A stretch of DNA of 64,000 bases. Source: Macrostomum lignano. Lineage: Eukaryota. A model generated the notes under the pieces. It did no database searches, was not told the DNA's origin, and worked only from the letters and a program-made list of their open reading frames with translations. Positions 47,801 through 50,800 of this stretch are shown piece after piece. The stretch covers positions 176,404-240,403 of the forward strand of contig NIVC01001762.1 in the NCBI GenBank assembly GCA_002269645.1. Direction: 5' to 3'. The position numbers were made by a program, and so were the translations under genes. The stretch's first letter is position 1. Each line of letters starts with the position of its first letter.

Positions 47801-50800
47801 ACACACGGGTAGACAGGCAGATGAGGCGGATTCAGACTCAGACAGAAATGCAATAGAAATCTAAGTGTAAAATATGTGATAAGAAAAGTAAAACGCTGCC
47901 ACTTATTCGATCAAAACAGAGGCCGAGTTGTAGAAAGCCTTGAGCAGAGGACTCAAGAAAGTGAAAATAGCGACAGAAAAGTGGGCAGGCGGGCAACAGG
48001 CTGGGCCCACAGTAGTGCCGAGTTCCTAATCCTATATTCCAGCTACAGAAAGCGCTCAAATGATCGTTAAAGTGGTATCGAATTTCTCTCCCAGCCTTGT
48101 CCAGAATTCCCGAATCCCCCTGGGCAGCGGTCTGACAGCAATTGGCGATCTTTCGCAGAAGAAGAAGACATCAGAAGACGGCAGAAGTAGAGCCAACCAA
48201 TAATCGATCATCCTGACGAGGGCCCCGATTGCCTCCCCCTGCTGGCGTTGCGGCTAATCCGATGCGACACTTTCTGACCCGCGGTTATTAATAATAATCC
48301 CATTAGCAGGTTCGAGCTGGGGACCCTCACCATCTTGACCGCTTGCTCAAGGAAAGCTTTGATCTCCTCGGCCGCCCGCTTGGCTTTCATTTCGGCGCGA
48401 TTCTGGTGGTCCTCAACGCAGATGAGCACGTGCAGCTCCTCGGCCAGGTGCTCCCAGTTCGGCTTGCCCCGGTTCTGGTCCTCCTGCGGAATTGGCGCAG
48501 GAATTGGGATTTGATTGAATCTAGTATCCCACCTGATGATTAGTATCAGTCTAGTATCCCACCTGATGATTAGTGCCAGTCTAGTATCCCACCTGATGAT
48601 TAGTATCAGTCTAGTATCCCACCTGATGATTAGTGTCAGTCTAGTATCCCACCTGATGATTAGTGCCAGTCTAGTATCCCACCTGATGATTAGTGTCAGT
48701 CTAGTATCCCACCTGATGATTAGTGTCAGTCTAGTATCCCACCTGATGATTAGTGTCAGTCTAGTATCCCACCTGATGATTAGTGTCAGTCTAGTATCCC
48801 ACCTGATGATTAGTGTCAGTCTAGTATCCCACCTGATGATTAGTGTCAGTCTGGTATCCCACCTGATGATTAGTGTCAGTCTAGTATCCCACCTGATGAT
48901 TAGTATCAGTCTAGTATCCCACCTGATGATTAGTGTCAGTCTAGTATCCCACCTGATGATTAGTATCAGTCTAGTATCCCACCTGATGATTAGTGTCAGT
49001 CTAGTATCCCACCTGATGATTAGTATCAGTCTAGTATCCCACCTGATGATTAGTGTCAGTCTAGTATCCCACCTGATGATTAGTGTCAGTCTAGTATCCC
49101 ACATTATGATTAGAGTGTCAGTCTAATACCCCACCTGATGATTAGCATTGGTTAATACCCCACATAACAATAAGAGTGTCAGACTAAGATCTTAATTGAG
49201 AACACATTTCTAAGGCCAAGTGAAAAGCCAGCCAACCTTTTTCTTATCCCGCATGGAGCCCTTGCCGCGGACCATGATCTTGCAGTCCAGGTCGGTCTCC
49301 AGCTGCTTGGCCGTCATGCCGCGTGGCCCCAACAGTCGGCCAACAAAGTTGTAGGAGGGATTGTCTTTCACAGGAATGAACACCTTCTCCTGCACCGTCA
49401 CTATGGGGCCCTCGCCTTCAGGCAGATCGTCAGATGCTCGCTTGGCGCCATTGAAGTGGAAGAGCTGGCTGCGAACTCTTGTGATCTCTGGTGTTTTTTG
49501 AGTGTTTTTAATTATTAATATTAAATGAGTATGCAAAAAATGGTAAAAAGAAAAATTCCATGCATAACACATTTTTTTAGAGTTTCAGAGGTTCCAGTGG
49601 ATATGATTTTGCCTAGTAGATATAAAGTTTTATACAAGGAACCCATAGACATTAGAGATAATCATATTTGAGTACATCAAAAAAATTGTAATACCCTATT
49701 ATGCTAATAGGTGTGTAAGCATATATTGATCCCAGGTATAGAGCTACATAATGTAGGATCACAAACAATTTTACATTTTCATAATCAAAAGTAACAGTTT
49801 TTTAGTTTTTTTGTTACTGGTTTAGTAGAAATAGGCTTTTATGCAATTTGAATTGGTTGATTTCCTAATTAGATGATTTTCAATAGTTCAAGAATATTGA
49901 TTTACTATTTTAATAACTCCACTTACTTCAAAAAGAAAGAAAATAACAGATTTGAACCTTTGCCTTTGTTTTCTTATTTTGTTTTTAATATAAAATTTGT
50001 AAAAATAGTAATAAGCTTACAAATTTTTAGTATATAGGATTATATATTTAAACTATATATAAATAGGCAACTACATACATGCACATCCCCTGATTTATAC
50101 ACACAAAGGTGTATTCAGTATGCCAGTGAAGTATGAGACAGACTAGGCCTATGGGCTATAGTCTATGATGCTTTACACCTGCCCCTATCTTCAGCAAGTT
50201 AAGGCTGGTGGGAGGTCTGCACCCTCTATTTGCTGCTAGCAGCCACAGACCCCACTCTCCATGCTGTCTTGCAAGTTGACCCAGGGGTACTCGTCCTGTA
50301 GTCTAGTAGTTAGCAGTCCTTTTTTTCTTTCTCTTCTTTCCTCTTTCTTTTGTGACTCGGTTCACTCCTTCCTGCTTTCAGCTATGGTCTATATGTGGGC
50401 CTTTAGGGGCTCGTGGAATGGGTGACCCTTGCCTCTGCATCTAGACAAATACTAGATGCATATATAATGAGTATATTTAAATAGGCATATAGAGAGATCT
50501 AGTATAGCTTTTGGTATATAATTTGGCATAGAGATCATCAAGATAGCAGATGAGACAAAGTTCTGAGTCTCAACAATATACAGTTGGCAAACAAAAAATG
50601 ACCAAGTTCAAATTTAGTATAGTCTCCATATATATTGATATAATAGATGATAGACCAAGGTAGCCATAGACCAATGTGGCTACTATAGATTAGAAGGTGA
50701 CATTTATGCCAAGATTTTTAAGCAAACAACAAGGGTACTTGTCATTTTTTGGCTAAGATCTATGGCATACCTGATTACCTGTGTATATTTTAGGCTCAAA

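What the first reader, a model, noticed from the sequence alone, without database searches (positions are those of the whole stretch)
48520..49110. Quaking gene carries 19 tandem copies of its own binding motif upstream of an internal 3' splice site
Seen: on the transcribed strand each 30-bp unit reads ..CUGACACUAAUCAUC.. or ..GAUACUAAUCAUC... ACUAAU occurs at 30-nt spacing 19 times (forward ATTAGT 48539 to 49079), and the last copy is ~55 nt from the acceptor at 48484 of the exon encoding the second half of the KH domain. Established: STAR proteins (QKI, HOW, GLD-1) bind ACUAAY as dimers, the motif mimics the branch point recognised by SF1/BBP, and QKI can compete with SF1. Inference: minisatellite expansion has built a high-avidity autoregulatory element (intron retention, exon skipping or a protein sponge) whose copy number could tune Quaking dosage. 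Rough chance that a given 30-mer contains ACUAAY on the sense strand is 1-2%, with ~25 arrays in the window, so coincidence is not excluded.
Basis: partly seen in the sequence, partly recalled or inferred. Interest (0 to 1): 0.75.

Follow-up and report, generated by a model that had tools for sequence, protein, structure and literature searches.

The report
Quaking-motif minisatellite in flatworm Quaking intron
An intron of a flatworm (Macrostomum lignano) Quaking-type RNA-binding-protein gene holds a 30-base tandem repeat that carries that protein family's own binding motif 19 times; an old sister gene has the same kind of repeat in the same intron, so self-regulation of splicing is plausible but unproven.

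Summary
ACUAAU occurs 19 times at exact 30-nt spacing on the transcribed (-) strand, inside a 20.8-copy minisatellite (48520-49145). The array lies in intron 2 (49236-48484) of a QKI/HOW-type STAR gene. The window is Macrostomum lignano (assembly Mlig_3_7, contig NIVC01001762.1).

New evidence for a function:
- All 24 RNA-contact residues of human QKI are identical in the window protein.
- Three recent gene copies keep the array, with 3, 28 and 28 motifs.
- An old paralogue (4-fold-site divergence 0.5; other introns unalignable) also has a 30-nt array in the same intron. It carries 29 ACUAAU motifs (31 in the whole intron) on a largely different unit. The chance of that is about 5%.
- The array RNA is predicted to be unstructured.

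Evidence against:
- 29% of the window is minisatellite.
- Copy number varies just as much in the other arrays.
- The neighbouring Na/Ca-exchanger gene has an ACUAAY array that simply supplies its branch point.
- Distant orthologues (Taenia, Rotaria) have a short, motif-free intron.
- All eight annotated products splice exon 2 to exon 3 normally.

Best reading (about 0.4): a multivalent platform for the gene's own nuclear product that modulates removal of intron 2. Rivals are a branch-point-derived repeat (0.25) and a neutral repeat with a chance motif (0.3). This would be a new variant of a known kind.

The parts
48520..49145 (-). 30-nt minisatellite, 20.8 units; sense-strand consensus ACACUAAUCAUCAGGUGGGAUACUAGACUG
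   Evidence: TRF; sequence read
48539..49084 (-). 19 ACUAAU hexamers at exact 30-nt spacing (STAR/QKI core motif, and also branch-point-like)
   Evidence: Motif scan; variant counts
48484..49236 (-). Intron 2, 753 nt. Donor AAG|GUUGGC has 5 of 9 matches to the consensus. The acceptor ...CCAAUUCCGCAG| has a poor pyrimidine tract. The last 37 nt are AG-free and hold no strong branch point.
49237..49487 (-). Exon 2 (end of QUA1 and first half of KH, ...[16 protein letters not shown]...MRDKKK). Read-through into intron 2 stops after 8 codons (VGWLFTWP*).
   Evidence: tblastn and gene model; ORF 49210..49572
48331..48483 (-). Exon 3, 153 nt, in frame (second half of KH: [12 protein letters not shown]...AVKM)
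51339..51615 (-). Exon 1 (start codon, N-terminal region and start of QUA1), lying in an AT-rich island
43260..43317 (-). Exon 4a, an alternative QUA2 exon ([19 protein letters not shown]), used in annotated products P0122 and P0243
41932..42007 (-). Exon 4b, an alternative QUA2 exon ([25 protein letters not shown]), used in P0121 and P0242. An alternative donor lies at 41800.
35825..36525 (-). Large Ala/Gln-rich C-terminal exon (76% GC)
32860..32925 (-). Terminal coding exon of the QKI-5-like isoform ([22 protein letters not shown])
   Evidence: tblastn, 100% identity; P0122 and P0243

Best explanation
The array is a lineage-specific intronic minisatellite whose unit carries the hexamer that Quaking-type STAR proteins bind. 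It gives intron 2 of the pre-mRNA 19 (3 to 28 in sister copies) evenly spaced, unstructured binding sites for the gene's own nuclear product and for the product of its paralogue.

Most likely mechanism: when the protein is abundant, dimers coat the repeat. The coat reaches to within 55 nt of the weak 3' splice site of exon 3. It hinders SF1/U2 recognition of branch-point-like sequences, so removal of intron 2 is delayed or exon 3 is skipped. A retained intron stops translation after 8 codons. Skipping deletes 51 residues of the KH domain. Either way less active protein is made, which is negative feedback.

A less likely direction within the same idea: binding masks the 19 decoy branch points, or helps the weak 5' splice site, and so promotes correct splicing.

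Shown: the motif array, its strand, place and spacing; the gene family and the conserved RNA-contact residues; an annotated isoform ending in a QKI-5-like C-terminus; recurrence of such an array in an old paralogue; predicted lack of RNA structure.

Inferred: binding in vivo, any effect on splicing, and its direction.
For: 1. There are 19 perfect ACUAAU at 30-nt spacing on the sense strand of an intron of a STAR gene.
2. The STAR domain matches QKI structure 4JVH at 1e-76, against about 1e-23 for SF1 and Sam68. All 24 QKI RNA-contact residues (list from PMC6847458) are identical in isoform 4b, and 17 of 17 KH-domain contacts are identical in the paralogue.
3. Paralogue L005 (Mlig020226g1) lies in a different genomic neighbourhood. 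It differs at 22 of 44 four-fold sites, and its introns 1 and 3 are unalignable with the window gene. At the same intron position it has a 41-unit, 30-nt array with 28 ACACUAAU. Of these, 27 are full bipartite sites, ACUAAU-AA-UAAC. It also has two unique ACUAAU at -34 and -26 from the 3' splice site. The composition-aware chance of the motif in that unit is 5%. None of the other six arrays in L005 has the motif.
4. Recent copies L002-L004 keep the array, and the expanded units are the motif-bearing ones.
5. The array RNA folds no better than shuffles: z=+1.96 for the window and -0.69 for L005, with unpaired centroids.
6. Annotated isoforms end ...[11 protein letters not shown], which resembles the QKI-5 C-terminus that carries the nuclear signal (resemblance judged from memory).
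7. Literature: QKI binds NACUAAY as a dimer. It causes skipping when bound within or up to 100 nt upstream of an exon. It competes with SF1 at branch points. It autoregulates in mammals, and QKI motifs occur in its own introns (PMC9786888; PMC5695090). QKI also activates weak 5' splice sites (bioRxiv 2025.09.04.674271).
Against: - 29% of the window is tandem array, and 15% of the genome is simple or tandem repeat (PMC5730564). A sense-strand motif array somewhere in this gene has about a 7% chance.
- The only independent test, the paralogue, is significant only at about 0.05. Its two arrays may also share ancestry, and the register of their alignment is ambiguous.
- The Na/Ca-exchanger gene next door has a sense ACUAAY array whose last unit is its branch point, so such arrays are not specific to Quaking genes.
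- Copy L002 has only 3 intact motifs, and a third of the L005 units (ACACUAUAAU) lack the motif.
- Copy-number variation equals that of the other arrays.
- Taenia and Rotaria orthologues have 106-nt and 74-nt introns without the motif.
- All eight annotated products join exon 2 to exon 3 normally.
- In the window unit the nearest UAAY half-site is 26 nt from the core, outside the 1-20 nt of the published bipartite element.
Confidence: 0.4

Rival explanations
1. Branch-point-derived minisatellite. The unit was seeded by slippage duplication of the branch-point region of the intron, or only repeats that can supply a branch point are tolerated next to a 3' splice site. On this view ACUAAU is present because SF1/U2 use it, with no special relation to the Quaking protein. 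The array is at most a reservoir of branch points or decoys.
For: The Na/Ca-exchanger intron array at 19922-20400 (32-nt unit, ACUAAY in 7 of 15 units, sense strand) ends 20 nt before the exon that starts at 20420. Its last unit, ACUAAC, puts a branch A 31 nt upstream of the splice site, followed by a C-rich tract and no usable AG. About 10 arrays in the window end within roughly 120 nt upstream of a 3' splice site. Those that abut the splice site supply branch-point-like motifs of various kinds, such as CUGAC in array 22876-24160. The window unit also contains CUGAC. The Quaking array ends 37 nt from the 3' splice site, and the unique tail has no good branch point.
Against: Only 1 of the 9 other splice-site-proximal arrays has ACUAAY, so branch points here are degenerate and the motif is not required. 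In the window an AG (UAG) lies 19 nt downstream of the last array branch A. If that branch point were used, scanning would pick the wrong acceptor and add 37 nt, a frameshift. In L005 the array ends about 110 nt from the splice site, and two unique ACUAAU at -34 and -26 already serve as branch points. The 29 motifs in that array are therefore not explained by this idea.
Confidence: 0.25
2. Neutral minisatellite. This is one of many thousands of intronic arrays in a repeat-rich genome. The hexamer is there by chance, and it is shared with the paralogue through common ancestry of the array or a second coincidence. The protein may bind it, but without any selected consequence.
For: Arrays make up 29% of the window and 28% of the gene. 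The chance of a sense motif array in the gene is about 7%, and in the L005 unit about 5%. Arrays in this genome share sub-motifs: 3 of 68 strand-arrays share an 8-mer or longer with the window unit, for example AUACUAGACU with the array at 37199. Copy number is as variable as in the other arrays, and L002 is decayed. Distant orthologues lack any array. No unproductive isoform is annotated.
Against: The joint probability of both paralogues having a sense-motif array in the same intron is about 0.001-0.004 if the events are independent. If the arrays are homologous, they kept period 30 and an 8-of-8 ACACUAAU block while unique intron sequence lost all similarity. Nothing else between the paralogues outside the exons is alignable.
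Confidence: 0.3
3. Protein sponge. The excised or retained intron titrates Quaking protein away from its other targets.
For: High site density (19-28 sites per RNA) and predicted lack of structure. Multivalent repeat RNAs that sequester RNA-binding proteins exist, for example PNCTR and PTBP1 (PMC6224606).
Against: Inference from stoichiometry: one pre-mRNA offers at most 28 sites once, whereas each mRNA yields many proteins, and excised introns are normally short-lived. There is no evidence of a stable intron or lncRNA here. Rfam finds nothing.
Confidence: 0.03

Closest known systems
Mammalian Quaking auto- and cross-regulation (Fagg et al. 2017, PMC5695090; review PMC9786888)
   Same: A QKI-family protein acts on its own transcripts through ACUAAY motifs. 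QKI motifs are present in introns of its own pre-mRNA. A nuclear QKI-5-type isoform exists.
   Different: In mammals the elements are single or few motifs in 3' UTRs and 3' terminal introns, and they control isoform choice. Here the element is a 19- to 28-fold tandem repeat in an internal intron that splits the KH domain. It is unproven and restricted to the Macrostomum lineage.
QKI-SF1 competition at a branch point (NUMB exon 12, Zong et al. 2014, as summarised in PMC9786888)
   Same: ACUAAY is both a branch-point-like sequence and a QKI site. Binding within about 100 nt upstream of an exon represses it.
   Different: NUMB has a single site at the real branch point. In the window the nearest motif is 56 nt upstream, with AGs in between. 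The paralogue L005 resembles NUMB more closely, with unique ACUAAU at -26 and -34.
Autoregulatory unproductive splicing (AS-NMD) of RNA-binding proteins (PMC6547761, PMC3967051)
   Same: A cluster of the protein's own motif sits in its own pre-mRNA. Retention of the intron gives a premature stop.
   Different: No unproductive isoform has been seen here. Known cases use conserved poison exons or unique motif clusters, not a copy-number-variable minisatellite.
Short-tandem-repeat-enriched multivalent RNAs such as PNCTR, which recruits PTBP1 (PMC6224606)
   Same: A tandem repeat creates a high-density array of sites for one RNA-binding protein.
   Different: PNCTR is a stable lncRNA that acts in trans. 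This array is an intron of the gene that encodes the binding protein itself.
Sex-lethal and muscleblind autoregulation through multiple intronic sites (recalled from memory, not checked here)
   Same: Several intronic binding sites for the gene's own product control splicing of its own pre-mRNA.
   Different: Different protein families. The sites are not a regular minisatellite. The direction of regulation is known there and unknown here.

Membership tests
QKI/HOW/GLD-1 subfamily of STAR proteins (the host gene) | Contiguous QUA1-KH-QUA2 (STAR) domain | tested here: met
   Pfam STAR_dimer plus KH-I_KHDC4-BBP on the annotated product. The full-length alignment to 4JVH (QKI) has E=1e-76 and to 4JVY (GLD-1) 6e-63, against about 1e-23 for SF1 and Sam68.
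QKI/HOW/GLD-1 subfamily of STAR proteins (the host gene) | Residues that contact the ACUAAC RNA in the QKI crystal structure are conserved | tested here: met
   24 of 24 are identical in isoform 4b, 22 of 24 in isoform 4a (L197V, Y204N), and 17 of 17 KH-domain contacts in paralogue L005.
QKI/HOW/GLD-1 subfamily of STAR proteins (the host gene) | Sequence-specific binding to ACUAAY | not testable with these tools
   Needs EMSA, ITC or CLIP.
Quaking response element (bipartite: NACUAAY plus UAAY within 20 nt) | Core NACUAAY on the transcribed strand | tested here: met
   19 cores in the window, and 3, 28, 28 and 31 in L002-L005.
Quaking response element (bipartite: NACUAAY plus UAAY within 20 nt) | UAAY half-site 1-20 nt from the core | tested here: not met
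   In the window unit the next UAAY is the next core, 26 nt away. In L005 the feature is met in 27 units (ACUAAU-AA-UAAC). Adjacent full cores could still be bridged by a dimer; that is an inference.
Autoregulatory unproductive-splicing element of an RNA-binding protein | Cluster of the protein's own motif in its own pre-mRNA | tested here: met
Autoregulatory unproductive-splicing element of an RNA-binding protein | An unproductive isoform (retained intron, skipped exon or poison exon) exists | tested here: inconclusive
   Retention would stop translation after 8 codons. However, all eight annotated or related products join exon 2 to exon 3. No RNA-seq data were available.
Autoregulatory unproductive-splicing element of an RNA-binding protein | Evolutionary conservation of the element | tested here: inconclusive
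   Present in three recent copies and one old paralogue. Absent from Taenia solium and Rotaria socialis. Other Macrostomum genomes could not be reached.
Autoregulatory unproductive-splicing element of an RNA-binding protein | Splicing responds to the level of the protein | not testable with these tools
   Needs RNAi or over-expression.
Functional branch point | yUnAy/ACUAAY about 18-40 nt upstream of the 3' splice site, with no AG in between | tested here: not met
   In the window the last motif's branch A is at -56, with AGs 7 and 19 nt downstream of it. The feature is met by the unique ACUAAU at -26 in L005 and by the Na/Ca-exchanger array at -31.

The most novel reading that the evidence does not exclude
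A minisatellite has been kept for a long time (since before the split of two Quaking paralogues, with four-fold-site divergence of 0.5) because its unit is the binding site of the protein that the gene encodes. Expansion and contraction of the repeat (3 to 28 sites among recent gene copies) then acts as an evolvable rheostat. It would set how strongly each copy is auto-regulated and cross-regulated at the splicing of the intron that splits its RNA-binding domain.
Probability: 0.15. Interest if true: 0.75.

Novelty: new variant of a known kind. Interest (0 to 1): 0.5.

Why it matters
Autoregulation of RNA-binding proteins through their own pre-mRNA is common. The known elements are unique, slowly evolving motif clusters or poison exons. 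A tandem repeat that is itself the binding platform would show how a fast-mutating class of DNA can build and tune a post-transcriptional feedback loop. It would also give a native function to some of the intronic minisatellites that fill this genome (15% of it). It would show as well that the QKI-versus-SF1 contest for branch-point-like sequence is used on the Quaking gene itself. M. lignano has RNAi and transgenesis, so the idea can be tested directly. If it is false, the case is a useful warning: in a genome with this many arrays, motif-bearing repeats next to splice sites arise readily, as the neighbouring gene shows.

Tried and rejected
- A search for more M. lignano paralogues or close relatives with the L005 protein found none beyond those already held. 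The closest relative, P0123 (89% identity, Logan run SRR30276812), is a spliced transcript with no intron 2.
- Look-ups of P0121 and of an oyster orthologue found no record.
- Environmental contigs with about 88% identity in exon 2 turned out to lack an intron at this position, so they are uninformative.
- Rfam: no family anywhere in the window.
- RNA folding: there is no stable structure to present or hide the motif. The window array is less structured than shuffles.
- Positional homology of the motif between the two paralogous arrays could not be established. The motif-anchored register (15 of 30, or 21 of 34 with gaps) and the MAFFT register (17 of 31) are about equally good.
- The intron 2 donor is weak (5 of 9 consensus matches) but not uniquely so in this gene, so I do not lean on the 'weak 5' splice site' argument.
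- Non-repeat sense ACUAAY is not enriched elsewhere in the gene: 4 sense against 9 antisense.
- A literature search for Macrostomum plus quaking returned nothing.
- Each unit could form an 18-nt in-frame micro-exon (UAG|ACUGACACUAAUCAUCAG|GUGGGA). I considered this but could not test it.
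Full report
**1. What is there.**
On the - strand, 48520-49145 is a 30-nt minisatellite with 20.8 units and 95% matches (TRF). Its sense consensus is ACACUAAUCAUCAGGUGGGAUACUAGACUG. ATTAGT on the + strand occurs 19 times from 48539 to 49079, with every spacing exactly 30. The 8-mers are ACACUAAU x12, AUACUAAU x5 and GCACUAAU x2.

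**2. The gene and the organism.**
A guide tblastn and inspection of splice sites give a - strand gene with these exons:
- exon 1: 51615-51339
- exon 2: 49487-49237
- exon 3: 48483-48331
- two alternative QUA2 exons: 4a at 43317-43260 and 4b at 42007-41932
- a large C-terminal exon: 36525-35825
- a further exon at 32925-32860, which encodes [22 protein letters not shown]

The array lies in intron 2 (49236-48484, GT..AG, 753 nt). This intron splits the KH domain after ...MRDKKK.

A protein search identifies the organism. UniProt A0A1I8GFL6 of Macrostomum lignano is 100% identical. The NCBI locus for Mlig000586g1 on contig NIVC01001762.1 of assembly GCA_002269645.1 is base-for-base identical to the window over 21 kb.

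The STAR domain aligns end to end with human QKI (4JVH, E=1e-76) and with GLD-1 (4JVY, 6e-63). It aligns far less well with SF1 or Sam68, at about 1e-23. All 24 residues listed as contacting RNA in the QKI structure (PMC6847458) are identical in isoform 4b. ACUAAY specificity is therefore a strong inference, though not a measurement.

Annotated isoforms P0122 and P0243 end with ...[11 protein letters not shown], which resembles the QKI-5 C-terminus that carries the nuclear signal, so a nuclear form probably exists. That resemblance rests on my recollection of the QKI-5 sequence.

**3. Is it more than chance?**
The genome is exceptional in its repeat content. 29% of the window, and 28% of the gene, is tandem array. 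The published figure for the genome is 15% simple and tandem repeats (PMC5730564). I count 29 arrays in the window.

A shuffle of the unit contains ACUAAY in 2.4% of trials. The expected number of sense-strand motif arrays in this gene is 0.068. On the window alone, coincidence at about 7% cannot be dismissed.

**4. The independent test: other copies of the gene.**
Cluster members and contig look-ups gave two kinds of copy:
- Three recent, syntenic copies (L002, L003, L004), each with Ribophorin I upstream and 0-2 coding differences in exons 2-3.
- One old paralogue, L005 (Mlig020226g1), with different neighbours.

L005 differs from the window gene at 22 of 44 four-fold sites, which is 0.82 after Jukes-Cantor correction. 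Outside the exons nothing aligns between the two genes; introns 1 and 3 give only random short hits.

Intron 2 sits at the same codon in all copies:

| Copy | Intron 2 length | ACUAAY count |
|---|---|---|
| Window | 753 nt | 19 |
| L002 | 371 nt | 3 (other units decayed, e.g. ACACUCCAAUC) |
| L003 | 1023 nt | 28 |
| L004 | 1024 nt | 28 |
| L005 | 1330 nt | 31 |

In L005, 29 of the 31 motifs lie in a 41-unit array that also has period 30. Its unit is different: GAUUACACUAAUAAUAACUACUGGUAGAUA. Twenty-seven of its units form a complete published bipartite site, ACUAAU-AA-UAAC. Twelve variant units (ACACUAUAAU) lack the motif. None of the other six arrays in L005 has the motif. The composition-aware chance for that A/T-rich unit is 5%.

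The two units share ACACUAAU, and their overall similarity beats 99.7% of shuffles. However, MAFFT prefers another register in which the two motifs are not aligned. So either the motif was retained (8 of 8 positions) while neutral intron sequence was randomised, or it arose twice. Both possibilities point the same way, but only at about p=0.05 for this one test. The arrays of this genome also share sub-motifs fairly often: 3 of 68 strand-arrays share an 8-mer or longer with the window unit.

At greater distance the element is absent. The homologous intron is 106 nt in Taenia solium and 74 nt in Rotaria socialis, with no ACUAAY in either. Some environmental relatives have no intron there at all.

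**5. Splicing anatomy.**
- The donor AAG|GUUGGC matches 5 of 9 consensus positions. It is weak, but not uniquely so in this gene.
- The acceptor region ...AUUCAAUCAAAUCCCAAUUCCUGCGCCAAUUCCGCAG| has a poor pyrimidine tract and no good branch point.
- The nearest strong branch-point-like sequence is the last repeat unit, at -56. A UAG lies 19 nt downstream of it. Use of that branch point would be expected to select the wrong acceptor, adding 37 nt and shifting the frame.
- The repeat therefore looks like a row of decoy or competing branch points upstream of a weak 3' splice site.
- Retention of the intron stops translation after 8 codons (VGWLFTWP*).
- Skipping exon 3 removes 153 nt in frame, which is half of the KH domain.
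- The array RNA is predicted to be unstructured: z=+1.96 against shuffles for the window and -0.69 for L005, with unpaired centroids. This suits a KH-domain protein that binds single-stranded RNA.
- In L005 the array starts at intron position +2 and the first motif is at +27. Two unique ACUAAU sit at -34 and -26 with no AG after the last, so they are canonical branch points that double as perfect QKI sites.

**6. Mechanism.**
Published rules for QKI are as follows:
- The dimer binds NACUAAY.
- Binding within or up to 100 nt upstream of an exon causes skipping.
- Binding in the downstream intron causes inclusion.
- QKI competes with SF1 at the NUMB branch point.
- QKI autoregulates, and QKI motifs occur in its own introns.

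These come from PMC9786888 and PMC5695090.

Applied here, the last two motifs (-55 and -85) fall in the repressive zone of exon 3. I therefore commit to negative feedback by occlusion of branch-point-like sequence as the most likely mode. The opposite sign is possible: masking of decoy branch points, or help at a weak donor (bioRxiv 2025.09.04.674271). I put the whole 'functional STAR-binding platform' idea at about 0.4, with roughly two thirds of that on the negative direction.

**7. Rivals.**
*(a) Branch-point-derived repeat (0.25).* The neighbouring Na/Ca-exchanger gene lies on the + strand (Pfam Na_Ca_ex on three exons). It has a 32-nt array at 19922-20400 with ACUAAY in 7 of 15 units on its sense strand. 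The last unit, ACUAAC, lies 31 nt before the acceptor at 20419/20420. It is followed by a C-rich tract. That repeat simply supplies the branch point.

About ten arrays in the window end within roughly 120 nt of an acceptor. Those that abut the acceptor supply assorted branch-point-like motifs such as CUGAC. Only this one, besides the Quaking array, has ACUAAY. The base rate of the motif near acceptors may therefore be higher than random (1 of 9). This rival does not explain the L005 array, which is far from its acceptor and redundant with unique branch points.

*(b) Neutral repeat with a chance or inherited motif (0.3).* This is supported by three points:
- the repeat load of the genome
- the decayed array in L002
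- copy-number variation in this array that is no greater than in the other arrays

The copy numbers in the window, L002 and L003 are as follows:

| Array | Window | L002 | L003 |
|---|---|---|---|
| intron-2 array | 20.8 | 7.8 | 29.8 |
| 22-mer | 58.8 | 45.8 | 22.6 |
| 26/31-mer | 22.7 | 5.8 | 21.0 |
| 28-mer | 19.6 | 13.6 | 30.3 |

The lack of any annotated unproductive isoform also fits this rival.

*(c) Sponge (0.03).* This is stoichiometrically implausible for an intron.

**8. Comparison with what is known, and novelty.**
The host gene is a member of the QKI/HOW/GLD-1 subfamily; its defining features were tested and met. The element works like known RNA-binding-protein autoregulatory clusters, and like QKI-SF1 competition. 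Membership in 'autoregulatory element' is not established, because the unproductive isoform and the response to dosage are untested. The window unit also fails the published half-site spacing, which the L005 unit meets.

A regular, copy-number-variable minisatellite serving as the platform in the protein's own intron was not found in the literature I could search. If real, it is a new variant of a known kind.

**9. Caveats.**
- Array lengths come from a PacBio-based draft assembly. L003 and L004 agree with each other, which helps.
The PDB alignment confirms the residues independently.
- The statements about Sxl and muscleblind autoregulation, and the QKI-5 C-terminal sequence used for the nuclear-isoform comparison, rest on my own knowledge.

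Noticed in passing
window 19922-20400 (+), exon starting at 20420: A second sense-strand ACUAAY minisatellite (32-nt unit, motif in 7 of 15 units) lies in an intron of the neighbouring Na/Ca-exchanger gene. Its last unit (ACUAAC at 20384) sits 31 nt before the acceptor and is followed by a C-rich tract, so the repeat supplies the branch point. It could also be a Quaking target.
   Followed up: partly
window 43317-43260 and 42007-41932 (-); L006 6538-6600 and 8455-8571: There are two alternative QUA2 exons (58 and 76 nt) that stay in frame only if they are mutually exclusive. Both are used in annotated products. Version 4a changes two RNA-contact residues (L197V, Y204N) and drops the GTYRD end. 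Taenia solium also has two QUA2-like exons, so the duplication may be old in flatworms.
   Followed up: partly
window 35825-53500: G+C rises steeply along the gene: exon 1 41%, exon 2 57%, exon 3 61%, exon 4 66%, exon 5 76%. Intron 1 is 30% GC and has no arrays. An AT-rich island (about 49.5-53.5 kb) lies between the head-to-head Quaking (-) and Ribophorin I (+) genes.
   Followed up: no
window 48520-49145 (-): Each unit also contains a 5'-splice-site-like CAG|GUGGGA (CAG|GUAGGA in L003 and L004) and a UAG 19 nt after the branch-point-like A. This could define an 18-nt in-frame micro-exon, ACUGACACUAAUCAUCAG (TDTNHQ). One reading frame through the whole array is open and continuous with exon 3 (ORF 48208..49104). 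There is no evidence of use.
   Followed up: no
L005 8552-9771: In the paralogue the array begins at intron position +2, so the donor GUAAUA is part of the first unit. ACUAAU is formed at the junction of successive units. Toward the 3' end the array forms a higher-order repeat of 30-nt and 29-nt units.
   Followed up: partly
window, about ten arrays, e.g. 22876-24160, 28723-29046, 29278-29911, 55472-56503: Many minisatellites end within 20-120 nt upstream of a 3' splice site. Those that abut the acceptor seem to provide the branch point from their own unit (e.g. CUGAC in the 23-mer at 22876-24160). Overall 29% of the window is tandem array.
   Followed up: partly
window 4544-5691 (+), 8389-9611 (+), 60284-61423 (-), 63401-63643 (+): Several copies of a gene that pairs a cysteine-rich exon (FEFDAVTA..SCNASSVTVSARSD.ECAVKCAQAGD..) with a fibrinogen C-terminal domain exon (Pfam PF00147, E=8e-18). 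This is a small tandem family flanking the locus.
   Followed up: partly
L008 (Logan SRR30276812 contig); P0241: Transcripts of the window gene (P0241) and of its closest relative in another sample (P0123) read through the exon 3 donor into intron 3 (…AVKM/VR…), although introns 1 and 2 are removed. Intron 3 retention seems common, whereas intron 2 retention was not seen.
   Followed up: no
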